Assembly (NCBI RefSeq): GCF_902713615.1
Contig: NC_052147.1
Coordinates: forward strand, 166,884,410-166,948,409
From: Scyliorhinus canicula
Lineage: Eukaryota
Length of the DNA stretch: 64,000 nt
Direction: 5' to 3'
The position numbers and the translations under genes are program-made. Under the pieces are notes generated by a model. The model had not been told where the DNA came from, made no database searches, and saw only the letters and a program-made list of their open reading frames with translations. Each line of letters begins with the position of its first letter. Position 1 is the first letter of the stretch. Of this stretch, positions 10,506 through 59,800 are shown piece after piece.

Positions 10506-10553
10506 TTGCTTGTTGAAACCTGGATTTTGTCATGTTGAAATATTCTGAAACAT

Positions 10554-11959: not shown

Positions 11960-12130
11960 TAATTAATAATAATAATTACCTATTGTCACATGTCGGCTTC
12001 AATGAAGTTAATGTGAAAAGCCCCTAATCGCCACATTCTGGCACCTGTTCAGGGAGGCTGGTACGGGAATTGAACCGGCACTACTGCCATTGTTCTGCAG
12101 CTGTTTAGCTTACTGTGCTAAACCAGCTCC
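11960..12130 (-). mobile_element. SINE fragment with a second tail type (..gtcacatgtcggcttcaatgaagttaatgtgaaaagcccct..)
   Basis: The same tail family recurs at 26620-26770 (-) and 62292-62552 (+). Confidence 0.6.
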
Positions 12131-18620: not shown

Positions 18621-18634
18621 GGTGTATGGATCGT

Positions 18635-25911: not shown

Positions 25912-25955
25912 GCTGTGTTATTCCCAAGGGCAAAGTCTTCAAGTCCAGAAAGGTT

Positions 25956-33000: not shown

Positions 33001-36000
33001 ACACAGTGATCTCTGGGCGGACACAGAGATCTCTGGGCGGACACAGTGATCACTGGGTTGGAACAGTGATGTCTGGGTTGGAACAGTGATGTCTGGGTTG
33101 GAACAGTGATGTCTGGGTTGGAACAGTGATGTCTGGGTTGGAACAGTGATGTCTGGGTTGGAACAGTGATGTCTGGGTTGGAACAGTGATCTCTGGGCAG
33201 ACACGGGGATCTCTGGGCAGACACAGTGATGTCTGGGCAGACTCTGATCTCTGGACAGACACAGTGATCTCTGGGTGGACACAGAGATCTCTGGGCAGAC
33301 ACAGTGATCTCTGGGCGGACACAGGGATCTCTGGGCTGACACAGTGATCTTTGGCCAGACACAGGGATCTCTGGAAAGTACAGTGATCTCTGGACAGACA
33401 CAGTGATGTCTGGGAAGACACAGTGATCTCTGGGTAGACACAGTGATCTCTGGGCGGACACAGTGATCTCTGGGCGGACACAGTGATGTCTGGGTTGGAA
33501 CAGTGATGTCTGGGTTGGAACAGTGATGTCTGGGTTGGAACAGTGATCTCTGGGCAGACACAGTGATCTCTGGGCAGACACGGGGATCTCTGGGCAGACA
33601 CAGTGATGTCTGGGCAGACTCTGATCTCTGGACAGACACAGTGATCTCTGGGTTGGAACAGCGATCTCTGGGCAGACACAGTGATCTCTGGGCAGACACA
33701 GTGATCTCTGGGCAGACACAGTGATCTCTGGGCAGACACAGTGATCTCTGGGCAGACACAGTGATCTCTGGGTTGGAACAGTGACCGCTGGGTTGGAACA
33801 GTGATCTCTGGGCAAACTCAGTGACCGCTGGGTTGGAACAGTGATCTCTGGGCAAACTCAGTGACCGCTGGGTTGGAACAGTGATCTCTGGGCAGACACA
33901 GTGATCTCTGGGCAGACACAGTGATCTCTGGGCAGACACAGGGATATCTGGGCGGACACAATGATCTCTGGGCAGACACAGGGGGCGAAATTCTCCGCCC
34001 CCCACGACGGGTGGGAGAATAGCGGGAGGGCCTTCCCGACATTTTTGCCGCACTCCCGCTATTCTCCCCCCCCCCCGCCGAAGTCCCGACCCGAATCGCT
34101 GCCGCCGTTTTTTTACGGCCGGCAGCGATTCTCAGCTGTTAGATGGGCCGAAGTCCCAGCCCTTTCCGCCGTTTTTACGAACGGCAAACACACCTGGTCT
34201 TGCCGTTCGTAAAAACGGCGTCACAAACTCGCTATTAATAACCATGGCACCGATTGGCACGGCAGTACCACGGCCGTGCCAAGGGTGCCATGGGCCCGCG
34301 ATCGGTGGGCACCGATCGCGGGCAGCGGGCCCGATGCCCGCGCACTACTTGTCCTTCCGCCGCCCCGCAGTATCAATTCACGGGGCGGCTGAGGGGCAAC
34401 CCGGCCCGCGCATGCGCGGGTTTCGCGCAAAAACGCGATGACATCACCCGCGCATGCGTGGGTTGGAGTCTTCCAAACTGCGCATGCGCGGCTGACGTCA
34501 TATGACGCATCAGCCGGCGCTAACTCCGGCAAGCGGGCTTAACGATTTTCGTTAAGCCCGTCTTGCCGGAGCCTACGGCGTCGGGCTGCTAGCCCCGACC
34601 GGGGACCAGAATCGGTCCCCGGTCGGGAAGGGGCGCGCTGCCGTAAAACCCGCCCGGGTTTTACGGCAGCTTTACGATTTCTCCCGTTTTGGGAGAATCG
34701 CGCCCAGTGTTCTCTGGAAAATACAGTGATCTCTGGGCAGACACAGTGATCTCTGGGCAGACACAGTGATCTCTGGGCAGACACAGTGATCTCTGGGCAG
34801 ACACAGTGATCTCTGGGCAGACACAGTGATCTCTGGGCAGACACAGTGATCTCTGGGCAGACACAGTGATCTCTGGGCAGACACAGTGATCTCTGGGCAG
34901 ACCACAGGGATCTCTGGGCAGACACAGTGATCTTTGGCCAGACACAGGGATCTCTGGAAAGTACAGTGATCTCTGGGCAGACACAGTGATCTCTGGGTAG
35001 ACACAGTGATCTCTGGGTAGACACAGTGATCTCTGGGCAAGAACAATTATCTCTGGGCAGATACAGTAATTGTGGGTAGTTAAGATATCTCTGGGCAGGT
35101 ACAGTGGTCTCTGGGCAGATGCAGGATTCTATGGGCAGACACAGTGATCTTTGGGCAGACACAGGGATCTCTGGGCAGACACAGTGATCTCGGGGCAGAC
35201 ACAGTGATCTTGGGGCAGACACAGCGATCTCTGGGCTGACACAGCGATATCTGGGCGGACACAGCGATCTCGGGGCAGACACAGTGATCTCTGGGCGGAC
35301 ACAGTGATCTCTGGGCGGACACAGTGATCTCTGGGCGGACACTGATCTCTGGGCAGACACTGATCTCTGGGCAGACACAGTGATCTCTGGGTTGTAACAG
35401 TGATCTCTGGGCGGACGCAGTGATCTCTGGGCGGACGCAGTGATCTCTGGGCGGACGCAGTGATCTCTGGGCGGACACAGTGATCTCTGGGCGGACACAG
35501 TGATCTCTGCGCGGACACAGTGATCACTGGGCGGACACAGTGATCACTGGGCGGACACAGTGATCACTGGGCTGGAACAGTGATCTCTGGGCGGACACAG
35601 TGATCTCTGGGCGGACACAGTGATCTCTGGGCGGACACAGTGATCTCTGGGCGGACACAGTGATCTCTGGGTGGACACAGTGATCTCTGGGCGGACACAG
35701 TGATCTCGGGGCAGACACAGTGATCTCTGGGCGGACACAGTGATCTCTGGGCGGACACAGTGATCTCTGGGCGGACACAGTGACCTCTGGGTTGGAACAG
35801 TGATCTCTGGGCAGCCACAGGGATCTCTGGGCAGCCACAGTGATCTCTGGACAGACACAGTGATCTCTGGGCGGACACAGTGATGTCTGGGCGGACACAG
35901 TGATCTCTGGGCGGACACAGTGATCTCTGGGCGGACACAGTGATCTTTGGGCGGACACAGTGATCTTTGGGTGGACACAGTGATCTTTGGGTGGACACAG

Positions 36001-39000
36001 TGATCTCTGGGTAGACACAGTGATGTCTGGGTTGGAACAGTGATCTCTGGGCAGACACGGTAATCTCTGGGCAGACATAGTGATCTCTGGGCGGACACTG
36101 ATCTCTGGGCAGACACTGATCTCTGGGCAGACACTGATCTCTGGGCAGACACAGTGATGTCTGGGCAGACTCTGATCTCTGGGCAGACACAGTGATCTCT
36201 GGGTCGTAACAGTGATCTCTGGACAGACACAGTGATCTCTGGGTTGGAACAGGGATCTCTGGGCGGACACAGTGATCTCTGGGCGGACACTGTGATCTCT
36301 GGGCGGACACAGTGATCTCTGGGTTGGAACAGTGATCTCTGGGTTGGAACAGTGATCTCTGGGCGGACACAGTGATCTCTGGGCGGACACAGTGATCTCT
36401 GGGCGGACACAGGGATCTCTGGGCAGACACAGGGATCTCTGGGCAGACACAGGGATCTCTGGGCGGACACAGAGATCTCTGGGCGGACACAGTGATCTCT
36501 GGGTTGGAACAGGGATCTCTGGGCAGCCACAGGGATCTCTGGGCAGCCACAGGGATCTCTGGGCAGACACAGTGATCTCTGGGCGGACACAGAGATCTCT
36601 GGGCGGACACAGAGATCTCTAGGCGGACACAGTGATCTCTGGGCAGACACAGGGACCTCTGGATAGACAGAGTGTTCTCTGGGTTGGAACAGGGATCCCT
36701 GGGCAGCCACAGGGATCTCTGGGCAGACACAGTGATCTCTGGGCAGACAGGGATCTCTGGGCGGACACAGTGATCACTGGGCGGACACAGTGATCACTAA
36801 GCTGGAACAGTGATCTCTGGGTAGACACAGGTATCTCTGGGTAGACACAGGTATCTCTGGGCGGACACAGTGATCTCTGGGCAGACACAGGGATCTCTGG
36901 ACAGACAGGGATCTCTGGAAGGTACAGTGATTTCTGGGCAGACACAGTGATCTCTGGGCGGACACAGTGCTCTCTGGGCGGACACAGTGATCTCTGGGCG
37001 GACACAGTGATCTCTGGGCGGACACAGTGATCTCTGGGCAGACACAGTGATCTCTGGGCAGACACAGTGATCTCTGGGCAGACACAGTGATCTCTGGGCA
37101 GACACAGTGATCTCTGGGCAGACACAGTGATCTCTGGGTAGACACAGTGATGTCTGGGTTGGAACAGTGATGTCTGGGTTGGAACAGTGATCTCTGGGCA
37201 GACACGGGGATCTCTGGGCAGACACAGTGATGTCTGGGCTGGAACAGTGATCTCTGGGCTGACACAGTGATATCTGGGTGGACACAGTGATCTCTGGGCG
37301 GACACAGTGATCTCTGGGCGGACACAGGGATCTCTGGGCGGACACAGGGATCTCTGGGCGGACACAGGGATCTCTGGGCGGACACAGGGATCTCTGGGCG
37401 GACACAGGGATCTCAGGGCGGACACAGTGATCTCTGGGTTGGAACAGTGATCTCTGGGTTGGAACAGTGATCTCTGGCCGGACACAGTGATCTCTGGGCG
37501 GACACAGTGATCTCTGGGCGGACACAGTGATCTCTGGGCGGAGACAGTGATCTCTGGGCAGACACAGGGATCTCCGGGTAGACACAGGGATCTCCGGGTA
37601 GACACAGGGATCTCTGGGCAGACACAGTGATCTCTGGGCGGACACATAGATCTCTGGGCGGACACAGTGATCTCTGAGTTGGAACAGGGATCTCTGGGCA
37701 GACACAGGGATCTCTGGGCAGACACAGGGATCTCTGGGCAGACACAGGGATCTCTGGGCAGACACAGTGATCTCTGGATAGACAGAGTGATCTCTGGGCG
37801 GACACAGAGATCTCTGGGCGGACACAGAGATCTCTGGGCGGTCACAGTGATCTCTGGGCAGACACAGGGACCTCTGGATAGACAGAGTGTTCTCTGGGTT
37901 GGAACAGGGATCTCTGAGCAGCCACAGGGATCTCTGGGCAGACACAGTGATCTCTGGGCAGACAGGGATCTCTGGAAGGTACAGTGATTTCTGGGCGGAC
38001 ACAGTGATCTCTGGGCGGACACAGGGATCTCTGGGCGGACACAGTGATCTCTGGGCGGACACAGTGATCTCTGGGCGGACACAGTGATCTCTGGGCGGAC
38101 ACAGTGATCCCTGGGCGGACACAGTGATCCCTGGGCGGACACAGTGATCTCTGGGCGGACACAGTGATCTCTGGGCGGACACAGTGATCTCTGGGTTGGA
38201 ACAGTGATGTCTGGGTTGGAACAGTGATCCTTGGGCAGACACGGGGATCTCTGGGCGGACACAGTTATCTCTGGGCGGACACAGAGATCTCTGGGCGGAC
38301 ACAGTGATCTCTGGGCGGACACAGTGATCTCTGGGCGGACACAGTGATCTCTGGGCGGACACAGTGATCCCTGGGCGGACACAGTGATCTCTGGGCGGAC
38401 ACAGTGATGTCTGGGTTGGAACAGTGATGTCTGGGTTGGAACAGTGATCTCTGGGCAGACACGGGGATCTCTGGGCAGACACAGTGATGTCTGGTCAGAC
38501 TTTGATCTCTGGACAGACACAGTGATCTCTGGGTTGGAACAGTGATCTCTGGGCGGACACAGTGATCTCTGGGCGGACACAGTGATCTCTGGGCGGACAC
38601 AGTGATCTCTGGGCGGACACAGTGATCTCTGGGCGGACACAGTGATCTCTGGGCGGACACAGGGATCTCTGGGCGGACACAGGGATCTCTGGGCGGACAC
38701 AGGGATCTCTGGGCGGACACAGGGATCTCTGGGCGGACACAGGGATCTCAGGGCGGACACAGTGATCTCTGGGTTGGAACAGTGATCTCTGGGTTGGAAC
38801 AGTGATCTCTGGCCGGACACAGTGATCTCTGGCCGGACACAGTGATCTCTGGCCGGACACAGTGATCTCTGGGCGGACACAGTGATCTCTGGGCGGACAC
38901 AGTGATCTCTGGGCGGAGACAGTGATCTCTGGGCGGAGACAGTGATCTCTGGGCGGAGACAGTGATCTCTGGGCAGACACAGGGATCTCCGGGTAGACAC

Positions 39001-41545
39001 AGGGATCTCTGGGCAGACACAGGGATCTCTGGGCAGACACATAGATCTCTGGGCGGACACAGAGATCTCTGGGCGGTCACAGTGATCTCTGGGCAGACAC
39101 AGGGACCTCTGGATAGACAGAGTGTTCTCTGGGTTGGAACAGGGATCTCTGAGCAGCCACAGGGATCTCTGGGCAGACACAGTGATCTCTGGGCAGACAG
39201 GGATCTCTGGAAGGTACAGTGATTTCTGGGCAGACACAGTGATCTCTGGGCGGACACAGGGATCTCTGGGCGGACACGTTGATCTCTGGGCAGACACAGT
39301 GATCACTGCGTTGGAACAGTGATCTCTGGGCAGACTCAGTGACCTCTGGGCGGACACAGTTATCTCTGGGCGGACACAGAGATCTCTGGGCGGACACAGT
39401 GATCTCTGGGCGGACACAGTGATCTCTGGGCGGACACAGTGATCTCTGGGCGGACACAGTGATCTCTGGGCGGACACAGTGATCTCTGGGCGGACACAGT
39501 GATCCCTGGGCGGACACAGTGATCTATGGGCGGACACAGTGATCTCTGGGTTGGAACAGTGATGTCTGGGTTGGAACAGTGATCTCTGGGCAGACACGGG
39601 GATCTCTGGGCGGACACAGTTATCTCTGGGCAGACACAGAGATCTCTGGGCGGACACAGTGATCTCTGGGCGGACACCGTGATCTCTGGGCGGACACAGT
39701 GATCACTGCGTTGGAACAGTGATGTCTGGGTTGGAACAGTGATCTCTGGGCAGACACGGGGATCTCTGGGCAGACACGGGGATCTCTGGGCAGACACACT
39801 GATGTCTGTGCAGACTCTGATCTCTGGACAGACACAGTGATCTCTGGGTTGGAACAGTGATCTCTGGGCAGACACGGGGATCTCTGGGCAGACACAGTGA
39901 TGTCTGGGCAGACTCTGATCTCTGGACAGACACAGTGATCTCTGGGTTGGAACAGTGATCTCCGGGCTGACACAGTGATCTCTGGGTTGGAACAGTGATC
40001 TCTGGGCTGACACAGTGATCTCTGGGTTGGAACAGTGATCTCTGGGCAGACACGGGGATCTCTGGGCAGACACAGTGATGGCTGGGCAGACTCTGATCTC
40101 TGGACAGACACAGTGATCTCTGGGTTGGAACAGTGATCTCCGGGCTGACACAGTGATCTCTGGGTTGGAACAGTGATCTCTGGGCTGACACAGTGATCTC
40201 TGGGTTGGAACAGTGATCTCTGGGCAGACACGGGCATCTCTGGGCAGACACAGTGATGTCTGGGCAGACTCTGATCTCTGGACAGACACAGTGATCTCTG
40301 GGTTGGAACAGTGATCTCCGGGCTGACACAGTGATCTCTGGGTTGGAACAGTGATCTCTGGGCTGACACAGTGATCTCTGGGTTGGAACAGTGATCTCTG
40401 GGTTGGAACAGTGATCTCTGGGCAGACACGGTAATCTCTGGGCAGACACGGTAATCTCTGGGCAGACATAGTGATCTCTGGGCAGACACTGATCTCTGGG
40501 CAGACACAGTGATCTCTGGGCAGACACAGTGATCTCTGGGCAGACACAGTGATCTCTGGGCAGACACTGATCTCTGGGCAGACACAGTGATCTCTGGGCG
40601 GGCACAGTGATCTCTGGGCAGACACAGTGATCTCTGGGCAGACACTGATCCCTGGGCAGACACAGTGATCTCTGGGCGGACACAGTGATCTCTGGGCAGA
40701 CACTGATCTCTGGGCAGACACTGATCTCTGGGCAGACACTGATCTCTGGGCAGACACAGTGATGTCTGGGCGGACACAGTGATCTCTGGGCGGACACAGT
40801 AATCTCTGGGCTTGTACAGTGATCTCTGGGCGGACACAGTGATCTCGGGGCAGACACAGCGATCTCTGGGCAGACGCAGGGATCTCTGAGCGGACACAGA
40901 GATCTCTGGGCGGACACAGGGATCTCTGGGCGGACACAGGGATCTCTGGGCGGACACAGGGATCTCTGGGTGGACACAGGGATCTCTGAGCGGACACAGG
41001 GATCTCTGGGCAGACACAGGGATCTCTGGAAGGTACAGTGATTTCTGGGCAACACAGTGATCTCTGGGCGGACACGGTAATCTCTGGGCAGACACAGAGA
41101 TCTCTGGGCAGACACAGTGATCTCTGGGCAGACACAGGGATCTCTGGGCTGGTACAGTGATCTCGGGGCGGAAACAGGGATCTCTGGGCGGACACAGGGA
41201 TCTCTGGGTTGGAACATGGATCTCTGGGCGGACACAGGCATCTCTGGGCGGACACAGGCATCTCTGGGCGGACACAGGCATCTCTGGGCGGACACAGGGA
41301 TCTCTGGGTTGGAACAGGGATCTGTGGGCAGCCACAGGGATTTCTGGGCGGACACAGGGATCTCTGGGCGGACACAGGGATCTCTGGGCGGACACAGGGA
41401 TCTCTGGGCGGACACAGGGATCTCTGGGCGGACACAAGGATCTCTGGGCGGACACAGGGATCTCTGGGCGGACACAGGGATCTCTGGACGGACACAGGGA
41501 TCTCTGGGAGGGCACCATAATCTCTGGGTCGGTACAATGATCTAT
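27043..41545. repeat. Satellite/macro-minisatellite array, 20-bp unit GGGC(A/G)GACACAG(T/G)GATCTCT, ~690 units with higher-order repeats
   Basis: Continuous 20-bp periodicity with recurrent variant units (GGTTGGAACAGTGATGTCT, GAGCAAACACAGGGATCTCT, 18- and 19-bp deletion units). Degenerate at both edges and interrupted once at 33983-34705. Confidence 0.97.
33983..34705. mobile_element. GC-rich Harbinger-type MITE inserted in the satellite
   Basis: TIRs GGGCGAAATTCTCC / GGAGAATCGCGCCC, flanked by AGG/AGT. Strongly palindromic interior with little CpG decay. Confidence 0.85.
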
Positions 41546-43235: not shown

Positions 43236-46200
43236 CAGGGGGCGTAGCCAGAGGCAGAGTCCCCCAGGGTTCCAAGCCTCTTAAAGGGGCAATGTATTCC
43301 GATCATCACAAGCCTCTTAAAGGGGCAAGGTATTCCCATCATCACATTCACCCCCTGTTTAAAAAAAACATAGTCCGTCGGGGATGAAGTGTTTTTAAAT
43401 TATAAGTTCAGTCTTTGTGGTGGTCTGATAGTCCGTGCTGACTTTCGCCTCTCCGGTGGTGGCGCCGTGGATGCGGTCGGTTCCGATGGTGGTCTATCCG
43501 GGAGCACGGTTGACTGAAGCTTTGTCCGCCTTGGAGAGGGGGGGGGGGTATCAGGAGTGATTAGGGTGGTCGGTGTCGGCTGGGGGGCAGGGGGCGCTAT
43601 GGAGGGGGCGCTGTCGAAGTCGGCGTTCAGTGTAGGGCCGGGAGCGTCGGTAGAAGGGGGGGGGGGGTCGGTGGGAGGATCGGTGGAGTCGGTGGGAGAG
43701 CCAGCGGGTGCCAGGTCTCGCAGGGATACAGTATCCTGCCTGCCATCGGGGTGCTCGACGTAGGCATAACGAGGGTTTGCGTGCAGCAGGTGGACCCTCT
43801 TGGCTATGGGATCCGTTGTATGGCTCCTCACATGCCTCCGGAGTAGGACTGGACCCGGAGTCGTCAGCCAGGGTGGAAGTGAGACTCCAGAGGTGGACTT
43901 CCTGGGGAAGACAAACAAACGATTGTGAGGGGTCTCGTTCGTGGCCGTACAGAGGAGCGACCTAATGGAGTGCAGGGCATCGGGTAGGACCTCCTGCCAG
44001 CGGGCGATAGGGAGACTCCTTGACCGTAGGGCTAGGAGGACAGCCTTCCAAACTGTCGCGTTCTCCCTCTCCACTTGCCCGTTTCCCCGCGGGTTATAGC
44101 TCGTCGTCCTGCTCGAAGCGATGCCCTTGCTGAGCAGGTACCGATGCAGCTCATCGCTCATGAACGATGTACCCCGGTCGCTGTGGATATAAGCGGGGAA
44201 ACCAAACAGAGCGAAGATGCTGCGCAGTGCCTTGATCACGGAGGCCGAGGTAGTATCGGGGCAGGGGACAGCAAAAGGGAAGCGGGAGAATTCATCGATG
44301 ACGGTGAGGAAATAGATGTTGCGGTTGTTGGACGGGAGAGGCCCTTTGAAGTCCACGCTTAGTCGCTCAAAGGGCCCAGAGGCTTTTATCAGGCGGGCCT
44401 TGTCTGGTTGATAGAACTGCGGTTTGCATTCTGCACAGATCTGGCATGCCTTAGTCATGGTCTTGACCTCCCCTGTGGAGTAGGGCAGGTTGCGGGACTT
44501 GATGAAGTGGGCAAGCCGGGTGACCCCCGGGTGGCAGAGGTCATCGTGGATGGCTCTCAGGCGGTCCAATTGCGCGTTGGCGCACGTGCCGCGAGACAGG
44601 GCATCTGGGGACTCGTTGAGCTTCCCCGGGCGATATTTAATATCGTACATATAGGTGGAGAGCTCTATTCTCCACCTCAGAATCTTGTCGTTCTTTATTT
44701 TGCCCCGTTGTGCGTTATCGAACATAAAGGCGACCGACCGTTGGTCGGTGATGAGGGTGAACCTCCTACCAGGTAGTGCCTCCAGTGTCGCACGGCCTCC
44801 ACTATGGCTTGTGCCTCCTTCTCGACTGCAGAGTGTCGAATTTCCGAGGCGTTGAGGGTTCGGGAGAAGAACGCTACTGGTCTGCCCGCTTGGTTGAGGG
44901 TAGCAGCCAGGGCGACGTCTGATGCATCGCTTTCTATTTGAAAGGGGATGGCTTTGTCCACCGCGTGCATGGCGGCCTTGATGATGCCGGCCTTGATACG
45001 GTTGAAAGCCGACTGGGCCTCATCCGTCAGAGGAAAAACCGTGGTCTTAATGAGTGGCCGGGCTTTGTCCCCATATCTGGGGACCGACTGGGCGTAATAG
45101 GAGAAAAGCCCCAAGCACCGTTTGAGTTCCTTGAGGCTACGGGGGAGGGGGAGTTCCTTAAGGGGACGCATGCGGTCGGGGTCCGGGCCTAGGACCCCGT
45201 TCTCCACGACGTAGCCGGGTTGTGTGGAACACGCATTTCTCTTTGTTGTAGGTGAGGTTGAGGGCCCGGGCAGTCTGGAGGAACTTCCTCAGGTTTGCGT
45301 CGTGGTCCTGCTGGTCATGGCCGCAGATGGTGACGTTGTCCAAGTACAGGAAGGTAGCCCGTAAGCCGTACTGGTCCACCATTTGATCCATCGCCCTCTG
45401 GAAAACGGAGACTCCGTTTGTAACACCAAAGGGCATCCTGAGGAAGTGAAACAGCCGACCGGCTGCTTCAAAAGCCGTGTAGGGGCAGTCCTCTGAGCGA
45501 ATAGGGAGTTGGTGGTAGGCCGATTTGAGGTCAACCGTGGAGAATACCCGATACTGGGCAATTTGGGTCACCATTTCAGCTATTCGGGGAAGTGGGTACG
45601 CATCGAGTTGTGTGAAGCGGTTTATTGTCTGGCTATAATCCACAACCATGCGTTGCTTTTCCCCAGAGCGGACTACTAATACCTGGGCCCTCCAAGGGCT
45701 GTTGCTGGCCTCTATGACCCCCTCTTTTAGTAGCCGCTGAACCTCCGACTTGATGAAAGTCAAGTCTTGGGTACTGTACCGGCGACTCTTGGTGGCGATG
45801 GGCTTACAGTCGGGAGTGAGGTACGCGAAGAGGCGGGGTGGCGCAACTTTGAGTGTCGCCAGGCTGCAGACTGAGAGTGGGGGCAGGGGTCCGCCGAACT
45901 TCAGTGTCAGGCTCCGGTGGCTGCACTGAAAGTCGAGGCCAAGCAGCAGGGGGGCGCAGAGTTGAGGAAAAATGTACAGTTTAAAACGGGAGTATTTCGC
46001 GCCTTGAATTGTGAGGTCAGCGACACAATACCCCGTGATTTGAACCAAATGGGACCCTGAGGCGAGGGCGATAGTTTGGGAGGCGGGATGGGTGCGCAGG
46101 GAGCAGCGCCTTACCGTGTCTGGGTGGATAAAGCTCTCCGTGCTCCCGGAGTTGAACAGGCAGGGAGTGTCTTGGCCGTTGATTCGCACCCGCATCATCG

Positions 46201-47494
46201 AGTTTCGCAGGTGTTTCGGCCGTGATTGATCAAGCGTGATCGCTCCTAGGTGCGGGCCGTCAGAGTCGGACTCACAAAATGGCTGCCCGGAGTCACAAGA
46301 TGGCCGCCGCCGCCGGTCGCACGTGTCGGGTTTCGAAGATGGCCGCCGCCAAGATGGCCGCTCCCATGACTCGCACGAGGTCGATGACGCGTCAGAAGTG
46401 GGCGTGTCTGGCCACAGTGCAGCCGCGTTGCGGGGTCTGTGAGGCTGAGAGCTTGATTTCTGGGCCCGGTGAGACTTTTGTTTGTAGCCTTTGGGCCCAG
46501 CCAGGCAGACGTTCGCGAAGTGCCCTTTCTTCCCGCAGTCGTTGCAGGTCGCGGATCGGGCCGGACAACGCTGACGTGGGTGCTGGCCTTGCCCACAGAA
46601 ATAGCATGGGGAGCCCCCGGAGTGAGTGGATCGACGCGTGGCACAGGCCTGTAGCGTGGCCGAGTCTGGAGGGGATCGAGAGGGATTTGTAAGGTCCGCG
46701 GAGTACGTACGGAGGTTACGGTGGGCCATTTCGAGAGAAAAGCCGAGCGTTACCGTGCCTTGGAGATCCTTCGCCCCGTCTTCTAGGAGCCGCTGCCGGA
46801 TGTACGATGACCTGATGCCAGACCCAAGGGCGTCGCGAATGTGTAAGTCCCTGTGTTCTTCAGCCGTCACTGCTTTGTGGTCGCAGTTCCTCGCGAGCGC
46901 GGTGAGTCTTTCCACGAACTCGTCCAGCATTTCTCCGGAGCGCTGGCTGCAGGTCGAGAGCAAATGCCTGGCATGTACCTCATTGGTAGTCTTTATGAAG
47001 CGTTTCTTCAATATTTCGATCGCCGCCTCATAGGTCGTAGCGGTTTCAATCATGGCAGAGATTCGGTGGCTCACCCGGCCATGTAGGAAGCGCAGCTTGC
47101 GAGTGCTGTCGACATCAGACGGTGAGGAGTCCAAATAATCCTCAAAACACCGGAGCCAATGTTTAAAGATTTCCGAGGCTTCAGGCGTCCTGCCTTCCAG
47201 GTTGAGTCTCTCTGGTTTCAGACCGCTGTCCATCTTGATGTGCACTGCTTATTAAATTGAGGCACTCTCAATTACGACACGAAAGTTAGGTCAGTAATCA
47301 AAGGCTTTAATAAGCAGTGGACAATGGCAGCCTCCATGAGAAGTGTGCTCGCAAAATGGAGTCTCATCTTAAGTACTGTTTCCCAGGGGGCGTAGCCAGA
47401 GGCGGAGTCCCCCAGGGTTCCAAGCCTCTTAAAGGGGCAATGTATTCCGATCATCACAAGCCTCTTAAAGGGGCAAGGTATTCCGATCATCACA
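43236..47494 (-). mobile_element. Near-complete Gypsy (Mag-like) LTR retrotransposon, 3' LTR truncated
   Basis: 5' LTR 47258-47494 (TG...CA). 3' LTR remnant 43236-43346 has 2 mismatches in 111 bp. PPT at 43347-43360. Domain order gag-PR-RT-RH-IN. Confidence 0.93.
43400..47233 (-). pseudogene. Gag-Pol polyprotein of the Gypsy element, with two frameshifts
   Basis: Gag starts at ATG 47233 and has two CCHC knuckles (CYFCGQGQH..C, CNDCGKKGH..C). Protease motif degraded to LFNSGS. RT motifs SPWRAQV, DLKSAYHQ, MPFGV, YLDN; RNase H SDASD; integrase HPG..CQIC, SVDFKG, HSDRG, NGQVER. Frameshifts near 45215 and 44770. Confidence 0.88.
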
Positions 47495-50329: not shown

Positions 50330-51191
50330 GTCGGTAGCCGTGAGGGTCACTGCACCCTGAACATCTATGCCACTGGGTTGTTCCAGGGCTCAAGCAGAGA
50401 TTAAGGCAGTCAGCCGTCCACAGATGAATCCATGAGGCTACGGATGCTCTGTATGCCCAGGAATTCAACTATGTCTTCCGGCTGTACCAGGCCCACCCAG
50501 ACGCCCAGGCTGCAGGATTTTCTGCCATCGCTGGGATGCCACAGGGCCAGGGGGTAATCAACGGCACACACGTTGCCCTACGAGCACCAGAGCATCAGGG
50601 AGTGCCCTATATTAACAGAAAGAGGTTCCACTCCCTAAATGTTCAGATCGTGTGCGGCCGCCACCGCTGAATCATGCATGAGTTTGCCCGTTACCCTGGG
50701 TGCATGCATGACAGCTGCAGCCTGGGACACTCAGAGAAAACCAGTGCCTTCGAGGACCACCCCAGGATGATGAGTTGGCTCGTGGTGGACAAGGGATACC
50801 CGCTGAGGTCATGGCTGATGACGTTGGTACAGAGGCCTGAGTCCGAGGTGGAGGTCCGATATAATGAGACCCACGCTGCCACTGGTGCTGTCATTGAGCG
50901 GCGTATTGGCCTGCTGAAAATTCAGTTTTGATGCCTGGACTGCTCTGGTGGTGCCCTCCAGTACACCCCCAGAGGGTCTACTGCTTTGTGGTGGTCTGCT
51001 GTCTCCCCCAAACTCTGGCCGAGCAGCAGCATAACATGCTGGACGAAGGGCAGGAGGAGGTGGAGGCAGTCTAGGAGATGCTGGATATCCAGCCCGAGGA
51101 GGAATGGGAAGATGGAGGACAGGCGGTAGCGACAAGGGTCCGACATACGAGGAGGTCCAGGGAGCCCCTCGTCGACTCAGCATTCTCCTAG
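50330..51191 (+). pseudogene. Harbinger transposase (HARBI1-like DDE) remnant
   Basis: GVINGTHVAL, NRKRFHSLNVQIVC, ARYPGCMHDS, VDKGYPLRSWLMT and IERRIGLLKIQF, interrupted by stops and frameshifts. Confidence 0.85.
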
Positions 51192-51769: not shown

Positions 51770-52977
51770 GGACCTGGGGCATCCCGGTGATGGAGGCAAA
51801 TTCTGCAGCCCAGGCATCAGGGTGGGCCCGGGTGATATAGTCTGATGCCCTGGCATATAGAGCATCCATAACCTCCCGGAGGTACCTGTGTATGGAAGAT
51901 TGTGTTATGCCGCACTAGTACCTGCTTGAGCCTTGCAATGACCCAGTGACCCACTGCGGTGACCTTGACAGCCACTGTGAGTTTGTCCTCCTCCTCCATG
52001 GATGACACTTTGGGCTGGATTCTCTAATTTTGAGGTTAAGTGCCGCCACCGGTTTTACGACAGAAAAAACTGCGCAACAGCTGCACTGATTCAGCTACTT
52101 TCATTGGGCTAGCATCATCGCCATGTGGAACACAACTAATTCCATGCAAAACGGTGCCGGATTTGCCGGGTCTGTCATTGGTGCACATGAGGCTCACACA
52201 CCACAGCCGCACATAAACGATCCACCCCCCACACACACCGTCCCAGCCAACAAGGTGGCTGGAAGGAGAGCAGCTCCACGGTTCAGGGACACTGAGTTGG
52301 ACACCCTCATCGACGTCATGGAGGAGGGGCAAATGACCCTGTACCACAGCGCGCTCGAAATGCCACACTGCCCCACATGCCATCCGCCAAGGCCGGGTGC
52401 TCTAGCCACTGAAGCCACCATCCACCAACTCCTGGGCTGTTTGCGCGGAACGTCTAACGGTTGTGCCGTTTGTGTTACCGCACCCCCACCAGGCGAAGGG
52501 CGGGCTCAACCGCTGAGAGAGGGAGAAGATCGGAGGGGGACCACCAGAACTGCGGCCCTTAACCCTGCCTGGGCATTCTGGTGGGCTTGTTCCACATGGA
52601 ACTGGTTGTATTGAGGCCCCTGGGCATATAGGGCGTCCGTGATGGTTCGGATGCACCTGTGTGCTGAGGTCTTTGAAATCCCGGACAGGTCCCCACTTGG
52701 CGATTCTGTGGCATAGACATTCAGGGCGACGGCCTGGCATGTCCTCAAATGACAACAGCACATGCCGTCATGAGGCGCCTCCTTGGCATCTCCCACTCCT
52801 CAATCTGTTGGGCGGCTGACCCACCAGCCTATGCAGATGCCACCTGCCCCTCTGCAGCTCGTTGCTCTGCAGCCCGGTCCTCTGCTGCCCGCTCTGCTAC
52901 TGCCTGCCCCGCTGCTGCAGCTTCCCTCTCCTCGCTGCTCACGCAGCCGCAGGGCACCTCGCATGGCTGCGACCATC
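51770..52977. pseudogene. Further Harbinger remnants: transposase fragments (-, 51770-52000 and 52560-52977) and Myb/SANT-like partner gene fragment (+, ~52250-52560)
   Basis: VALNVYAT..GDLSGISKTSAHRCIRTITDALYA on the minus strand, AGRRAAPRFRDTELDTLIDVME on the plus strand. Confidence 0.65.
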
Positions 52978-53196
52978 GGTGCTATGTCTTTTCGTCCGAC
53001 GTCATTTCGTCCAACGACACTTCGTCCACGTCTTTTGGTCCAACGTCTTTTTGTCCGCACGTCTTTTGGTCCTACGTCTTTTTGTCCAATGATTTTTTTC
53101 GTCAAAGACTTTTTGTAACTTGACTTTTTGTAAATAGAAATCTTCTCTAATGCACATAGCAAGATATAATATGTAATAAAGGATTTTTATTACCGG

Positions 53197-53292
53197 TCTC
53201 TTTCCTTTAACGAGCCTCGTTAAAGGATAGTTATTATCGTTCTCTTTCCTTTAACGAGCCTCGTTAAAGGATAGATATTATCGTTCTCTTTC
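53197..53292. repeat. 44-bp tandem repeat, each unit carrying a 25-bp palindrome, upstream of the transposase ATG
   Basis: TCCTTTAACGAG-C-CTCGTTAAAGGA at 53203-53227 and 53247-53271. Confidence 0.9.
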
Positions 53293-53311
53293 TTAATTCG
53301 CCCATCCCGAA

Positions 53312-54727
53312 ATGGCAAAGTTCATTGTGTCAACGAAGAGCAAAAGGAAGGTAGCTGATGAAAGTAACTACATCTACGATTTTCATTCAAGCAGTACAAA
53401 CCTAGGAAAAGAATACTGGAGATGTGAGAAAAGAAGGCTGTGTTCAGTGCGGATTCACACGGTAACGGAAAACAATGAGCCGAAAATTATTTATTTTTCT
53501 AATGAGCACCTTCATCCAGCTGATGTTGATTCGTTAAATGCTAGAAAAGCAGTTGCAGAAATAAAGCATGAAGCAGTGGAAAACATAGCAGCAAGTTCGC
53601 GTAGCATTCTAGCGGCCAAGTTTACGCAGCTATCAGAAAATACCTGCTCTCAACTTCCTAGGTTGCCCGTCGTCTCAAGGACTATTCAAAGGTGCCGACA
53701 AAAAAATTCTGGATTTCCCGCTAATCCAGCGGCTAGACACGGTTTTGAAATACCTGACAAATATTGTAAACTTGACAATGGCGAACAGTTTCTGAGATAC
53801 GATTCGGGCGCCGAGGATCAACAGCGCTTACCAGTATTCACATCAGAAAGTGCTCTTCATGATTTAGCATCATATCGTCATTGGGCATGTGATGGAACAT
53901 TCAAGATTGTGCCACAACAGTGGTTTCAACTGTTCTGCATTCATGTACAAGTTAAAGGTAGCAGTTTTCCACGGGTCTTTGCATTACTGCCGAATAAAAG
54001 AAAGCAGACATACGAATTATTTTTTGACCAATTGAAAATGATGCAACGTAATGCAGATCCGATTGATATCATGGCAGATTTCGAAGTTGCAGTTCACAAG
54101 GCAATTAATTCATCATTCCTTAATTCATCTGTCGTGGCATGTTTGTTTCATTTGAGCCAATCTGTGTTTCGAAAAATTACCGATTTAGGCCTCAAAGAAA
54201 AATACAATACAGACTCTGAATTCTGTCTTAAAATTCGATGTTTTTCAGCATTAGCTTTCCTCCCCGTTGAAGATGTCGAAGAGGCTTATGAAGATTTTAT
54301 AGACGATGAAGAAATACCTGCTGAATTCATCGTTTACTTCGACTTGACTTACATAGGCATTGTGAGAGGACGTGGTGCCAGACGAAGGAGAGAAACACCT
54401 ACATTCCCGACAGCTGTATGGAATGTTAATCAGCGTGTTCTACAAGATCTACCGAGAACAAATAATGCTGCTGAGGGTTTTCATTCTGCGATAAAACGTT
54501 CGGCGGGTGGAGCTCATTTGAATATCTGGAGGTTAATCAAAACTCTGAAGGAAGAGGAAGGGTTCATAATAGGCAAAAAGGCTCAAATTCTTCGGGGAGA
54601 TCAGTTGACTTCATGTACGCGATATAAGAAAATAACTGAACGCCTCAAAAGATTGGTCGTTGAATATGATTCTACAACAAAAATTGATTTCTTGAGGAAT
54701 GTTGCTTACAATTTACATCAATTTTAA
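53312..54727 (+). CDS. Mutator-family transposase (FLYWCH zinc finger + MULE DDE domain), 471 aa
   Basis: Uninterrupted ORF. FLYWCH YWRCEKRRLC...EHLHP; catalytic D (WACDGTF), D (MADFE), CxxH (CLFH) and E (TNNAAEGFH). Confidence 0.9.
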   Translation: MAKFIVSTKSKRKVADESNYIYDFHSSSTNLGKEYWRCEKRRLCSVRIHTVTENNEPKIIYFSNEHLHPADVDSLNARKAVAEIKHEAVENIAASSRSILAAKFTQLSENTCSQLPRLPVVSRTIQRCRQKNSGFPANPAARHGFEIPDKYCKLDNGEQFLRYDSGAEDQQRLPVFTSESALHDLASYRHWACDGTFKIVPQQWFQLFCIHVQVKGSSFPRVFALLPNKRKQTYELFFDQLKMMQRNADPIDIMADFEVAVHKAINSSFLNSSVVACLFHLSQSVFRKITDLGLKEKYNTDSEFCLKIRCFSALAFLPVEDVEEAYEDFIDDEEIPAEFIVYFDLTYIGIVRGRGARRRRETPTFPTAVWNVNQRVLQDLPRTNNAAEGFHSAIKRSAGGAHLNIWRLIKTLKEEEGFIIGKKAQILRGDQLTSCTRYKKITERLKRLVVEYDSTTKIDFLRNVAYNLHQF

Positions 54728-55125
54728 GTAACTTTAAGAATTTACATTTTCCAACTGTATTCTCTAAGTGATGTGATATCTTTCGGGAATTTTATCAATT
54801 AGTAAACTTTTAGATTTTTTAACTGCATTTTTCAACTTTTTACTTGCATTTTATCAATTAATTCTCATAGTAAACTTTTAGATTTACTTGCTGTATTGTA
54901 CTTGCATTTTATCAATTAAATTCTCATTGAAGGTATTATACCTGGTTTTTGGAATTGGATAATTGGACAAAAAGACGTTGGACCAAAAGACGTGCGGACA
55001 AAAAGACGTTGGACCAAAAGACGTGGACGAAGTGTCGTTGGACGAAGTGACGTCGGACGAAAAGACGCGACACGGCGACCATCGCCACGGCAGCCAGCAT
55101 TGCAGGTTGAACGGCAAACAACATT

Positions 55126-55700
55126 GGGCGGGATTCTCCGACCCCCAGCTGGCAGCAGCCCCCCCAGCAATTCTCCGAGCCGCGGTGGGCCAAGTGGCCG
55201 CCCGTTTCCGACAGGTACTTACCGGCGGGACCTGGCTCCGCGGGCGGCCACCGGGGTCCTCGGGGGGGGGGGGGGGTGCAGGGTGATCTGGCCCCCGGGG
55301 GTGTCCCCATGGTGGTCTGGCCCACGATCGGAACCCGCCGATCCGCGGGCGGCCTGTGCAGTGGGGGCACTCTATTCCTCTGCGCCGGCTGGTGTACCAG
55401 TCCGCGATGGCCAGCGTGGAGATGAACCTCACTGCGCATGCGCTGGGATGACGCCAGCACACACTGGCACTCCCGTGCATACACCAACTCGCACCGGCCA
55501 GCGGAGGTCCTTCGCCGCCGGTTGGCGTGGCGCCAAGCCCCTTCTGCTCCGGCCGGCGTGGGGCAAATCACTCCAGCGCCGGCCTAGCCCCTGAAGGTGC
55601 GGAGGATTCCGCACCTCAGGGCGGCCCGACGCCGGAGTGGTTCACGCCATTGCTTCGCACCAGAGGTGCCCACCCTGCCGGTTTCTGGAGAATCCCACCC
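55126..55700. mobile_element. Harbinger-type MITE
   Basis: GGGCGGGATTCTCC...GGAGAATCCCACCC with a perfect TSD ATT. Confidence 0.85.
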
Positions 55701-56047
55701 ATTGTCTGCAGGGGATGGAAGGCCAACATGCACAGCGCATGCCTCCGTGCCCAGCCAGGGTCCATGGGCTACTGCGTAGAACCAGGGACCGATGTGGGTG
55801 TGCAGCAAGGTGGCCACCGTAATGGCAGTCAGTGCCCAGGCACTGCCCCTGTCCAGTGGAGGTCCCATGGCATGTTTCTCCCCCCTCTCCCCCTCCCCTG
55901 GTGTCCAGGCCGGCAGCCCGCAGTCACTTCACGCCATTTCCTACCTCCTCTTTTTCCTACCTCACGACTTTTGAGAGCACAAGTAAACCACGCCGTCGTG
56001 AACCCAGCCCATCGGAGACGGTGATCCCTGGGGCTCCGGACAATTAT

Positions 56048-58207: not shown

Positions 58208-59800
58208 GAGTCATAGAGGTTTACAGCATGGAAACAGGCCCTTGGGCCCAACTTGTCGATGCCGCCCAGTTTCTATCACTAAGCTAGTCCCAATTGCCTG
58301 CATTTGGCCCATATTCCTCTATACCCATCTTACCCATATAAGTCAAAATGCTTTTTAAAATACTGCGCCGGTTGGCGGGCCCCCCGCATCGAATCTCCTG
58401 CCCGCGATGGGCCGAAGTTCCGCCGCTGTCAGGCCAATCCCGCCGACGTGGTTTCAACCACCTCTGGTGCCGGCAGGAGCAGGCGCAGCGAATGGGTCCT
58501 GGGGGTGGGGGGCATGGGGCGATCTGACCCTGGGGGGTGTCCCCACGGTGGCCTGTCCCACGATCAGGGCCCACCGATCGGCGGGCAGGCCTGTGCCGTG
58601 GGGGCACTCTTTTTCTTCCGCCGCTGCCACGGCCTCCACCATGGCGGAGGCGGAAGAGACCCCCTCCACCGCGCATGCGCCGGGGTGACGTCAGCGGCCA
58701 CTAATGCTCCGGCGCATACACGGACTCACGCTAACCGGCGAAGGCCTTTCGGCCAGCTGTGGCGTCGGTCGGCAGGGCGCCAAAGGCCGTTTGCTCCGGT
58801 CGGCAGAGCGGGAGCCATTCCGGCACGGGCCTAGCCCCTAAAGGTGCGGAAAATTCCACACCTTTGGGGAGGCCCGTGCCGGAGTGGTTCTTGCCACTGC
58901 GTTACGCCGGGAGCCCCCACCCGGCCGTGTAGGGGAGAATCCCGGCCCTTGATCCGGACACTCTTCACCCTCTGTGTGAAAAAACTCTCCTTTAGACCCT
59001 TTTGTATCTCTCCCCTCTTAACTTAAATCTCTGCCCTCTAGTTTTAGACTCCCCAACCTTTGGAAAGATGTTGACTATCCAGCTTATCTGTTCCCATCAT
59101 TATTTTATAGACCTCTATAAGATTACCCCTACGTTCTACGCTCCAGGGAAAAAAGTCCCAGTCTACCAGCCTCTCCTTATAACTCAAACCATCTAGTCCC
59201 GGGAGCATCCTAGTAAATCCTATCTGCACTCTTTCTAAATTAACAATATCCTTTCTATACTAGGTTGACCAGAACTGTACACAGTATCCCATGTGTGGTC
59301 TAACCAATGTCTTATACAACTTCAACAAGACGTCCCAAATCCTGCATTTAAGCTTTGACAGAGTCATCGGACTCGAAACGTTAGCCCTTTTCTCTCCCTA
59401 TAGATGCTGCCAGACCTGCTGAGATTTTCCAGCATTTTCTCTTTTGTTTCAGATTCAAGCATCTGCAGTAATTTGCTTTTATCCTGTATTTAATATTCTG
59501 ACCAATGAAACCTAACATGCCGAGTGCCTTCTTCACCATCCTTTCCTCCTGTGACTCCACTTTCAAGAAGCTATGAAGCTGTACTCCTAGATCTCTTTGT
59601 TCTATAACTGTCTCCAACACCCTACCATTAACTGAGTAGGTGCTGCCCCAATTCGATCTATCAAAATGCATCACCTCACATTTATCTAAATTAAACTCTT
59701 ATCTGCCATTCATCGGCCCACTGGCCCAAGTGATCAAGATCCCTTTGCAATCTGAGATAACCTTCTTCACTATCCGCTATGCCACCAATCTTGGTGTTCT
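58208..59800 (-). mobile_element. Decayed CR1 LINE with nested MITE (~58365-58947) and Penelope-like fragment (59350-59481)
   Basis: FTRMLPGLDGLSYKERL and QRDLGVQLHSFLKV on the minus strand, with the tail near 58210. Confidence 0.8.

What the first reader, a model, noticed from the sequence alone, without database searches (positions are those of the whole stretch)
52969..55083. Apparently intact, young Mutator (FLYWCH-MULE, Phantom-like) transposon in a shark genome: horizontal-transfer candidate
Seen: a 2097-bp element with a perfect 9-bp TSD, 113-bp TIRs that are nearly identical beyond the outermost ~10 bp, and an intronless 471-aa ORF with complete DDE and CxxH motifs. It is AT-rich yet CpG-retaining, unlike the decayed TEs around it, and is inserted into a dead Harbinger transposase. 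It is the only undamaged TE ORF in the window. Known: FLYWCH+MULE elements with subterminal repeats (Phantom group) are typical of invertebrates and protists, and autonomous Mutators are uncommon in vertebrates. Inference: a recent invasion, possibly still active.
Basis: partly seen in the sequence, partly recalled or inferred. Interest (0 to 1): 0.75.

Follow-up and report, generated by a model that had tools for sequence, protein, structure and literature searches.

The report
Octopus-like Mutator transposon in a shark
This is a complete, little-decayed copy of a multi-copy Mutator-type (FLYWCH-MULE) jumping gene in a vertebrate genome; octopus copies are about 85% identical in DNA, non-coding ends included, so it entered by horizontal transfer, but this copy looks like it is drifting rather than active.

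Summary
A 2097-bp element (52978-55074) has a perfect 9-bp target-site duplication, ~113-bp inverted ends and an open 471-aa FLYWCH + MULE transposase. All catalytic residues are present (D194, D256, C277xxH280, W370, E388). GC is 38% and CpG is undepleted, while the flanks are old and CpG-poor.

Horizontal transfer is strongly supported. Three Octopus vulgaris loci are 83-85% identical in DNA over the ORF. One of them, L001, is 80-83% identical in both non-coding ends, with the same 19-nt terminus and an 8-9-bp duplication. dS is about 0.30. In the protein tree the shark groups with octopus inside prawn and environmental sequences. A Palaemon prawn protein is 77-78% identical.

"Recent and possibly active" is only partly supported. 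In 20 runs from 7 studies of one organism the family is multi-copy and has amplified internal-deletion derivatives. This copy, however, carries about 10 private ORF changes (7 replacements to 3 silent, neutral-like), including L174P at a conserved position. The family's majority lineage changed 5 silent to 1 replacement, which indicates selection.

I did not confirm the host as a shark; it is a chordate by its gamma-crystallin exon. The scan noted this family twice before on other DNA of this genome (s1-253623, s1-216895). I found no paper reporting a MULE in sharks.

The parts
52969..52977 (.). Left copy of the 9-bp target-site duplication
   Evidence: The same 9 nt recur at 55075-55083. The direct repeat can be read as 10 nt (family D12).
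52978..53090 (+). Left terminal inverted repeat (~113 nt), made of ~15-nt sub-repeats. The first 19 nt are identical to the octopus copy L001.
   Evidence: I1: 108 nt at 97%; D1 sub-repeats; end-to-end alignment; octopus terminus.
53177..53308 (+). Three tandem 44-bp units between the TIR and the ATG. The first two carry a 23-nt palindrome. The octopus copy has one unit, with a symmetric (compensatory) change in both palindrome arms.
   Evidence: D3, I4, I12, I13; L001 2118-2164; 89-91% local matches.
53312..54727 (+). Open 471-aa transposase ORF (stop codon included)
   Evidence: ORF; Pfam MULE and FLYWCH; alignment A1; AlphaFold2, pLDDT 89; best fold match is the IS256-family ISCth4 transposase.
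53363..53515 (+). FLYWCH zinc-finger domain (aa 18-68; W36, C38, C44, H66, H68)
   Evidence: PF04500, 1.8e-8; C38 and H68 nearly invariant; matches the FLYWCH1 domain 2rpr, TM 0.69 by target.
53882..54160 (+). MULE catalytic core (aa 191-283) with D194, D256 and C277xxH280. W370 (54419-54421) and E388 (54473-54475) lie downstream, after an all-helical insertion.
   Evidence: PF10551; invariant columns; D194 on strand 190-195, D256 just after strand 252-255, E388 on helix 385-398. Motif definitions are from PMC5499845.
53831..53833 (+). Codon 174, a private Leu-to-Pro change in this copy at a conserved hydrophobic position in a predicted beta-strand
   Evidence: all contigs in 4 runs read T at 53832; codon effect; L/I/V/M in all 19 homologues; strand 174-176. 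Polarity from octopus DNA is unresolved, but the homologues point to Leu as ancestral.
54732..54927 (+). AT-rich 3' subterminal region with ~59-bp spaced repeats
   Evidence: families D4, D5; GC 0.29; partly alignable with the octopus copy.
54962..55074 (-). Right terminal inverted repeat
   Evidence: Its translation matches the tail of the prawn gene model P0033.
55075..55083 (.). Right copy of the 9-bp target-site duplication

Best explanation
The stretch is one full-length copy of a multi-copy cut-and-paste DNA transposon of the Mutator superfamily, with the FLYWCH-MULE architecture typical of Phantom.

Inferred mechanism, by analogy with Muta1. The N-terminal FLYWCH zinc finger binds the 15-nt sub-repeats stacked in the 113-bp inverted ends. 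The RNase-H-like DDE core (D194, D256, E388, with CxxH and W370) excises the element through double-strand breaks, with hairpins formed on the flanking DNA. It then joins the 3'-OH ends to a staggered target, which gives the 9-bp duplication.

Origin. The family entered this vertebrate lineage by horizontal transfer from a pool of elements circulating in marine invertebrates. Octopuses and palaemonid prawns carry the closest relatives; the actual donor and vector are unknown. In the host it amplified to roughly a hundred or more coding-length copies, plus many internally deleted derivatives.

This copy. It branched off early from the lineage that became the family majority. Since then it has accumulated about 10 neutral-looking substitutions in its ORF. 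It is most likely a young, slowly decaying copy rather than the active source element.
For: Shown:
- Anatomy: TSD, TIRs, sub-repeats and ORF.
- Protein family: Pfam MULE and FLYWCH. The catalytic and signature residues are invariant, with D-D spacing of 62 aa, D-E spacing of 132 aa, and CxxH 21 aa after the second D. These fit the definitions in PMC5499845 and PMC13359780.
- Fold: a confident model with an RNase-H-like core. The best fold match is the IS256-family ISCth4 transposase, at probability 1.00.
- Multi-copy family in the host: 20 runs from 7 studies of one organism hold about 60% of the element's 31-mers. Contigs of the ORF have word depth 288-826, against 2.8-4.2 for the perfectly matching single-copy flanks. 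TIR depth is 9,000-20,000. Recurrent deletion joints occur at 53324>54556, 53272>54680 and 53133>54294. Loose ends at 52977 lead into differing flanks.
- Horizontal transfer: octopus loci L001, L005 and L004 are 83-85% identical over 827-1453 nt. For L001, the non-coding ends are 80-83% identical, the first 19 nt of the terminus are the same, and there is an 8-9-bp TSD. dS is about 0.30 and dN about 0.12. In the tree the shark is sister to octopus (95/80) and joins Palaemon at 100/99, nested among palaemonid and Tara Oceans sequences. The tail of a prawn gene model is a translated TIR.
- Age and selection: polarised against octopus, this copy's lineage has 7 replacement and 3 silent changes (neutral-like, P 0.37). 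The majority lineage has 1 replacement and 5 silent (P 0.002).

Inferred: which DNA the FLYWCH finger binds, the hairpin chemistry, and the direction of transfer.
Against: No contig bridges either junction by 31 nt. One contig reaches only 3 nt into the right end. Read-level support for this particular insertion is therefore thin, and no empty-site allele could be sought properly.

The copy-number figures come from summed contig word depth, which the tool warns is not a copy number.

The 'majority' sequence is read from collapsed unitigs, not from individual copies, and the polarised counts are small (16-20 sites).

Transcription rests on two runs whose RNA label is only guessed.

Prawn DNA could not be fetched.

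Presence or absence in other sharks and other vertebrates could not be tested. The named protein hits contain no vertebrate, but they also lack this host's own copies, so that absence is uninformative.
Confidence: 0.85

Rival explanations
1. The family, and possibly this copy, is still transpositionally active in the living species. This would be a recent, ongoing invasion.
For: The ORF is open and all catalytic residues are intact. CpG is undepleted. This copy differs from the majority contigs by only about 1.3%. Deletion derivatives have amplified, and contigs of up to 1143 nt occur in runs guessed to be RNA. In those runs the element is about 10 times better represented, relative to a neighbouring high-copy repeat, than in the DNA runs. 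The majority lineage shows purifying selection.
Against: This copy's private changes are neutral-like and include L174P, A177T and L329F at conserved positions. An open frame after 10 random hits is expected 60% of the time. No insertion polymorphism or empty site was seen. The RNA label of the runs is a guess.
Confidence: 0.3
2. The acquisition is old. The element entered an early elasmobranch (or older) ancestor and looks young only because shark genomes mutate very slowly. The insertion would then be shared by distant sharks.
For: The shark lineage is about 9% (K2P, ORF) from the ancestor of the octopus copies, so the transfer need not be recent. Slow substitution rates in cartilaginous fishes are established knowledge, not tested here. 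All 7 studies of the organism hold the family.
Against: The flanking repeats are 16-30% diverged from their own copies in the same window, against about 0.7-1.3% for this element. Only 2 of the 53 CpGs in the ORF show decay relative to the family majority, in a genome whose other DNA has CpG o/e of about 0.5.
Confidence: 0.25
3. Vertical inheritance from the bilaterian ancestor, with loss almost everywhere else.
For: None, beyond the general possibility of repeated loss.
Against: dS is about 0.30, and the non-coding ends are alignable at 80-83% between a chordate and a mollusc. Synonymous and non-coding sites are saturated at that host distance (established knowledge). The tree groups shark with octopus to the exclusion of prawn.
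Confidence: 0.01
4. Artefact: invertebrate (prey or parasite) DNA was misassembled into the vertebrate scaffold.
For: No contig bridges the junctions by 31 nt or more. The element's base composition differs sharply from its flanks.
Against: A perfect 9-bp TSD flanks the element. The family occurs in 20 runs from 7 studies of the organism, at about 100 times single-copy depth and with several different flanks. One contig starts 3 nt inside the right end and continues into the flank. Earlier scan notes record other copies elsewhere in the same genome.
Confidence: 0.02

Closest known systems
Phantom subclass of Mutator elements (Marquez and Pritham 2010, as described in PMC3169594 and PMC6446971), including Tm1 of root-knot nematodes
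   Same: [quoted passage not shown] A 9-bp TSD. Long ends built of repeats, sometimes foldback-like. Hosts are mostly invertebrates.
   Different: The host here is a vertebrate, whereas Phantom group 20 is listed only from flatworms, crustaceans, other arthropods, a tunicate and an ichnovirus. I did not test placement in a tree with canonical Phantom sequences.
Muta1 of Aedes aegypti, the biochemically characterised animal MULE (PMC5499845)
   Same: The DDE triad, a (C/D)xxH motif 15-45 aa after the second D, a conserved W before the E, an 8-10-bp TSD, and subterminal repeats and a terminal motif needed for transposition. This is the basis of the proposed mechanism.
   Different: Activity of the shark family is untested. 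The predicted core here is a standard RNase-H-like fold with an all-helical insertion, whereas the Muta1 paper found secondary-structure predictions atypical.
Octopus vulgaris / O. bimaculoides and Palaemon carinicauda FLYWCH-MULE copies (L001, L004, L005; P0001, P0005, P0033-P0035, P0039)
   Same: The same family. Octopus DNA is 83-85% identical over the ORF. One copy (L001) is 80-83% identical in the non-coding ends, has the same 19-nt terminus and has the same 44-bp palindrome-bearing unit. Amino-acid identity is 75-78% to both octopus and prawn. The prawn TIR is recognisable in translation.
   Different: The octopus copies are dead: 2-4 stops each and, in the two full-length copies, 6-8 indels; those two are 13.7% apart. 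They carry one 44-bp unit instead of three. The copy in this window is open and far less decayed.
ISCth4 (IS256 family) bacterial transposase, PDB 6xgx / 6xg8
   Same: It is the best structural match of the predicted catalytic core (Foldseek probability 1.00). This agrees with the accepted IS256-Mutator relationship.
   Different: Only 11-13% sequence identity. It has no FLYWCH domain and is a prokaryotic insertion sequence.
Known horizontally transferred DNA transposons of vertebrates, mainly Tc1/mariner and hAT (surveys PMC7070016 and bioRxiv 10.1101/2024.12.18.629015)
   Same: The same phenomenon and the same kinds of evidence: low dS against host divergence, incongruent trees, and an aquatic setting.
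   Different: Neither survey mentions Mutator/MULE or sharks in its main text. The superfamily and the host group are new for this phenomenon, as far as the searchable literature goes.

Membership tests
Mutator superfamily (MULE) | MULE transposase domain (PF10551) above Pfam's cut-off | tested here: met
   45 bits against a cut-off of 27.6, E 1.6e-11, aa 191-283.
Mutator superfamily (MULE) | DDE triad, with (C/D)xxH 15-45 aa after the second D and a conserved W upstream of the E (PMC5499845) | tested here: met
   D194, D256, C277xxH280 (21 aa after D256), W370 and E388 are all invariant in 20 sequences. The spacings of 62 and 132 aa fall in the ranges quoted in PMC13359780.
Mutator superfamily (MULE) | Target-site duplication of 8-10 bp, flanking terminal inverted repeats | tested here: met
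   a perfect 9-bp TSD and ~113-nt TIRs. The octopus copy has an 8-9-bp TSD.
Mutator superfamily (MULE) | Catalytic core structurally related to IS256-family transposases | tested here: met
   a model with pLDDT 89; the top Foldseek hits are ISCth4 chains at probability 1.00.
Mutator superfamily (MULE) | Demonstrated excision and integration | not testable with these tools
   Indirect signs only: a multi-copy family, amplified deletion derivatives and differing flanks.
Phantom subclass | N-terminal FLYWCH zinc finger joined to the MULE domain (PMC3169594) | tested here: met
   PF04500 at 34.8 bits against a cut-off of 23.6, aa 18-68. C38, C44, H66 and H68 are present; matches the FLYWCH1 domain 2rpr.
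Phantom subclass | Phylogenetic placement with canonical Phantom/Muta sequences (group 20 of PMC6446971) | not tested
   No canonical Phantom sequence was available from a tool. The nearest named relatives are crustacean, cephalopod, sea-cucumber and tick proteins.
Horizontally transferred transposon | Sequence similarity far above what the host divergence allows, including at silent and non-coding sites | tested here: met
   83-85% nt identity, dS about 0.30, and non-coding ends 80-83% identical between a chordate and a mollusc. A host-gene dS control was not computed; saturation at this distance is taken from general knowledge.
Horizontally transferred transposon | Element tree incongruent with host tree | tested here: met
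   (shark, octopus) at 95/80, inside a 100/99 clade with Palaemon. The host tree would pair octopus with prawn. The root is at the midpoint only, and the octopus rows are fragments.
Horizontally transferred transposon | Patchy distribution: absent from the host's relatives | tested here: inconclusive
   No named vertebrate appears among the hits, and JGI metagenomes hold no close relative. But the host's own copies are also missing from the protein collection, and no eukaryote genome collection could be searched.
Horizontally transferred transposon | Empty orthologous site in sister species or individuals | not testable with these tools
   All runs returned were from one coded organism. Contigs break at the repeat edge.

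The most novel reading that the evidence does not exclude
Some copies of this family are still able to transpose in a living shark. That would make it the first naturally active Mutator-superfamily transposon known in a vertebrate. It would have been acquired across phyla from a pool shared with cephalopods and prawns, perhaps by a predator-prey or parasite route, and would be a candidate new vertebrate-compatible gene-transfer vector.
Probability: 0.25. Interest if true: 0.8.

Novelty: new member of a known kind. Interest (0 to 1): 0.62.

Why it matters
The most recent broad survey of Mutator elements that I could read (PMC6446971, 2019) could not confirm any vertebrate MULE. [quoted passage not shown]

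This element answers it directly. It has every defining feature: domain, catalytic motifs, TSD and TIRs. It belongs to a multi-copy family embedded in a genome that carries a chordate-type lens crystallin gene.

It also gives an unusually clean case of cross-phylum transfer. Full-length DNA homology, including the non-coding ends, links a chordate and a mollusc, with a crustacean relative as well. That widens the set of transposon superfamilies known to cross into vertebrates and points to the marine food web as the setting.

If any copy is active, it would be a new kind of tool for vertebrate genetics. If none is, it remains a dated marker of a past invasion.

Tried and rejected
1. Exact look-up of the ORF in the 15-billion-protein collection: absent.
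The prawn comparison therefore stayed at protein level, plus a translated-TIR match.
3. IMG/VR scan for a viral vector: only a 26%-identical MULE on a 158-kb contig, so no close relative. Phage records: no match.
4. JGI metagenomes: no relative through the exact peptide patterns. The 19-nt terminal motif gave two 20-nt chance matches with no further homology.
5. PDB sequence search: nothing meaningful. The fold search was needed instead.
6. Pfam on the ORF pieces around the insertion: only a sub-threshold HTH_Tnp_4 match. I could not show that the target lies inside a Harbinger transposase.
7. Treating the raw 1.3% difference from the majority contigs as insertion age: rejected after polarising with octopus. 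About half of those differences arose in the majority lineage.
8. Treating the even silent:replacement split of all differences as selection on this copy: rejected for the same reason. The selection signal belongs to the majority lineage.
9. Host identification: I searched one crystallin exon only and made no joined, spliced model. I ran no further search on it.
10. The exhaustive representative search was not run. Its library has no names, and the shark, octopus and prawn sequences would collapse into one 50% cluster.
11. Literature searches for a MULE in sharks, or for octopus-shark transfer: nothing found. Marquez and Pritham 2010 is not held.
Full report
OBSERVATION

A direct repeat of at most 10 nt lies at 52969-52978 and 55075-55084. 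Read as a 9-bp target-site duplication, it bounds an element of 2097 bp (52978-55074). The two ends are inverted repeats over about 113 nt. The outermost 9 nt agree at 5 of 9 positions. The next 104 nt have 3 mismatches; one search gives 108 nt at 97%.

Each end is a stack of about seven 15-nt sub-repeats (families D1 and D2). A 30-nt probe from the repeat occurs four times in the window, all inside the two ends, against none in shuffles. No other fragment of the element exists in the window.

Between the left end and the ATG lie three tandem 44-bp units; the first two carry a 23-nt palindrome. The single ORF (53312-54727, 471 aa) needs no intron.

GC is 0.38 against 0.57-0.59 in the flanks. 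CpG observed/expected is 1.15 (0.95 in the ORF), against 0.44-0.67 in the flanks and 0.51 for the window. The window contains no N.

WHAT THE PROTEIN IS

[quoted passage not shown] In an alignment with 19 homologues, D194, D256, C277, H280, W370 and E388 are invariant. The CxxH motif lies 21 aa after the second D, and the W lies 18 aa before the E. These are the signatures that Liu and Wessler list for MULE and hAT transposases (PMC5499845). The D-D and D-E spacings (62 and 132 aa) fall in the ranges reported for arthropod MULEs (PMC13359780).

An AlphaFold2 model built on that alignment is confident (mean pLDDT 89.1). It shows an RNase-H-like core. D194 sits on strand 190-195, D256 follows strand 252-255, and E388 sits on helix 385-398, after an all-helical insertion. 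Its best match among solved structures is the IS256-family transposase ISCth4 (probability 1.00), and the N-terminus matches a FLYWCH1 domain.

Membership of the Mutator superfamily is therefore met on every sequence and structure criterion I could test. 'Phantom' is met on domain architecture (PMC3169594), but I did not test it by phylogeny with canonical members.

THE FAMILY IN THE HOST

Twenty public runs from seven studies hold about 60% of the element's 31-mers. All are from one coded organism.

I laid four of them on 52000-56000. Contigs match the single-copy flanks perfectly at word depth 3-4 (for example 52781-52959), so this organism is the window's species. ORF contigs have depth 288-826, and the ends have depth 9,000-20,000. 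The tool warns that summed word depth is not a copy number. Read cautiously, this means on the order of a hundred or more coding-length copies and many more end-bearing derivatives.

Recurrent joints (53324>54556, 53272>54680 and 53133>54294, each at high depth) are internally deleted derivatives that have themselves multiplied. This is the usual by-product of cut-and-paste activity. Loose ends at 52977 lead into differing sequences, which means other insertion sites.

Two runs guessed to be RNA have no depth on the single-copy flanks but carry ORF contigs of up to 1143 nt. Relative to a neighbouring high-copy repeat, the element is about ten times better represented in them than in the DNA runs. 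That suggests transcripts but does not prove them.

No contig bridges either junction by 31 nt. One contig begins 3 nt inside the right end and runs into the flank. No empty-site joint was listed. Read support for this particular insertion is therefore thin but not contradictory.

HORIZONTAL TRANSFER

The exact protein is not in the 15-billion-sequence collection. The closest proteins are from the prawn Palaemon carinicauda (77-78% identity) and from Octopus bimaculoides and O. vulgaris (70-77%). Next come unnamed marine and environmental contigs below 60%, and then Macrobrachium, a sea cucumber and a tick. No vertebrate is named. The host's own copies are also missing from that collection, so this absence proves little.

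The decisive evidence is DNA. Three O. vulgaris loci on three chromosomes match the element at 83-85% identity over 827-1453 nt. For the most complete copy (L001):
- The non-coding 5' and 3' parts align at 83% and 80%.
- The first 19 nt of the left terminus are identical.
- The copy is flanked by an 8-9-bp duplication.
- It carries one copy of the 44-bp unit. Its palindrome differs from the shark's by a symmetric change in both arms, so the palindrome itself is preserved.

Nei-Gojobori distances between the shark ORF and the octopus copies are dS 0.29-0.31 and dN 0.115-0.13. The two full-length octopus copies are 13.7% apart and 15-17% from the shark copy (K2P). That puts the shark lineage about 9% from their common ancestor.

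In a maximum-likelihood tree the shark sequence has a short branch. It is sister to the octopus sequences (95/80) and joins Palaemon at 100/99. The whole group is nested among palaemonid and Tara Oceans sequences, which conflicts with the host tree. A prawn gene model (P0033) ends in a tail that is the translation of a homologous inverted end. This agrees with the earlier scan note that the prawn element has the same ends.

It is general knowledge, not computed here, that silent and non-coding sites are saturated between chordates and molluscs. On that basis vertical descent is excluded.

The octopus copies are dead: 2-4 stops each and, in the two full-length copies, 6-8 indels. They are older than the shark copies, and the prawn is no closer. 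Neither is the direct recent donor. The donor and the vector are unknown. A scan of viral contigs found only a 26% relative.

HOW YOUNG, AND IS THIS COPY ALIVE?

This copy differs from the majority contigs at about 22 positions. I polarised them with the octopus copies. In the ORF, about ten changes are private to this copy: seven replacements and three silent. That fits the neutral expectation of 78:22 (P 0.37). Two of the ten are CpG-to-TpG or CpG-to-CpA changes.

The replacements include L174P at a position that is hydrophobic in all 19 homologues and lies in a predicted beta-strand. They also include A177T and L329F at conserved positions.

At six to nine other positions this copy keeps the ancestral base and the majority has changed. 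Those changes are five silent to one replacement (P 0.002), or seven of ten if minor variants are counted (P 0.001).

My reading is as follows. This copy split off early. The lineage that became the majority went on evolving under purifying selection, that is, while it was still transposing. This copy has since drifted by about 0.7%. Sixty percent of simulated ORFs stay open after ten random substitutions, so the intact frame is weak evidence of function.

The element is nevertheless far younger than its surroundings. The repeat on its right flank is 16-30% diverged from its other copies in the window.

CONTEXT AND LITERATURE

The window carries a gamma-crystallin exon (Pfam Crystall, 5.8e-34) whose nearest protein clusters are chordate. 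I searched only that single exon and made no joined, spliced model. That the genome is a catshark comes from other notes of this scan; I did not test it.

A Harbinger DDE_Tnp_4 remnant lies at 50674-50928, and a sub-threshold HTH_Tnp_4 match lies 180 bp from the insertion. Whether the target itself lies in a Harbinger ORF remains unshown.

Dupeyron et al. 2019 regard earlier vertebrate MULE reports as misidentified and ask whether MULEs are absent from vertebrates. Chalopin et al. 2015 list MuDR only in human, as a possible transfer. Two large surveys of horizontal transposon transfer do not mention Mutator or sharks in their main text. No searchable paper reports a MULE in elasmobranchs or an octopus-shark transfer.

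This scan itself noted the family twice before on other DNA of this genome (s1-253623, a damaged copy with a prawn relative; s1-216895, a truncated copy inside a Gypsy).

VERDICT

Current activity is open for the family and unlikely for this copy. It is a new member of a known kind of element and process, in a host group where the superfamily was thought doubtful.

Noticed in passing
window 53177-53308; L001 2118-2164: There are three tandem 44-bp units just upstream of the transposase ATG, and the first two hold a 23-nt palindrome. The octopus copy has a single unit whose palindrome differs by a symmetric change in both arms, so the palindrome is conserved across phyla. It is a candidate regulatory or protein-binding site with no tested function.
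   Followed up: partly
window 27060-41508: A 14.4-kb satellite of a 20-bp unit (about 718 copies, 82-83% matches). It gives long spurious ORFs in several frames on the - strand.
   Followed up: partly
window 55206-55700, with relatives at 5960-6444, 25955-26180, 58494-58951, 4768-5160: The right flank of the insertion belongs to an old, very high-copy repeat. It is 70-84% identical to its other copies in the window and has word depth up to 33,000 in the DNA runs. No Pfam domain was found in the ORFs tried.
   Followed up: no
window 50674-50928 (+) and 52506-52796 (-): Harbinger remnants in opposite orientations: a clear DDE_Tnp_4 piece (E 4e-12) and a sub-threshold HTH_Tnp_4 piece (E 0.02). 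The region looks like nested or rearranged Harbinger debris.
   Followed up: partly
window 20594-20887 (-): An open exon encoding two Greek-key motifs of a gamma-crystallin (Pfam Crystall, 5.8e-34). Its nearest protein clusters are chordate.
   Followed up: partly
window 43400-47245 (-) and 11-1249 (+): Other long open TE ORFs: Gypsy gag-protease-RT (695 aa), integrase (441 aa, a separate ORF), and an RT ORF of 412 aa at the window's start. The MULE is therefore not the only long open TE frame here.
   Followed up: partly
L006 3001-3687 (IMG/VR contig IMGVR_UViG_2706796633_000001, 158 kb): A distant MULE-like sequence (26% identity over residues 170-415) on a contig filed as viral. It is too distant to bear on the vector question.
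   Followed up: no
P0033 (Palaemon carinicauda gene model), residues 173-195: The annotated prawn protein runs out of the transposase frame into a translated terminal inverted repeat. The gene model is really an internally deleted transposon copy.
   Followed up: partly
L002 (Tara Oceans marine metagenome contig, 2785 bp) and L003 (ENA contig, 85.7 kb): Full-length 471-473-aa FLYWCH-MULE ORFs at 45-49% identity sit on marine and environmental contigs, presumably from planktonic animals. This shows the wider clade is common in the sea.
   Followed up: no
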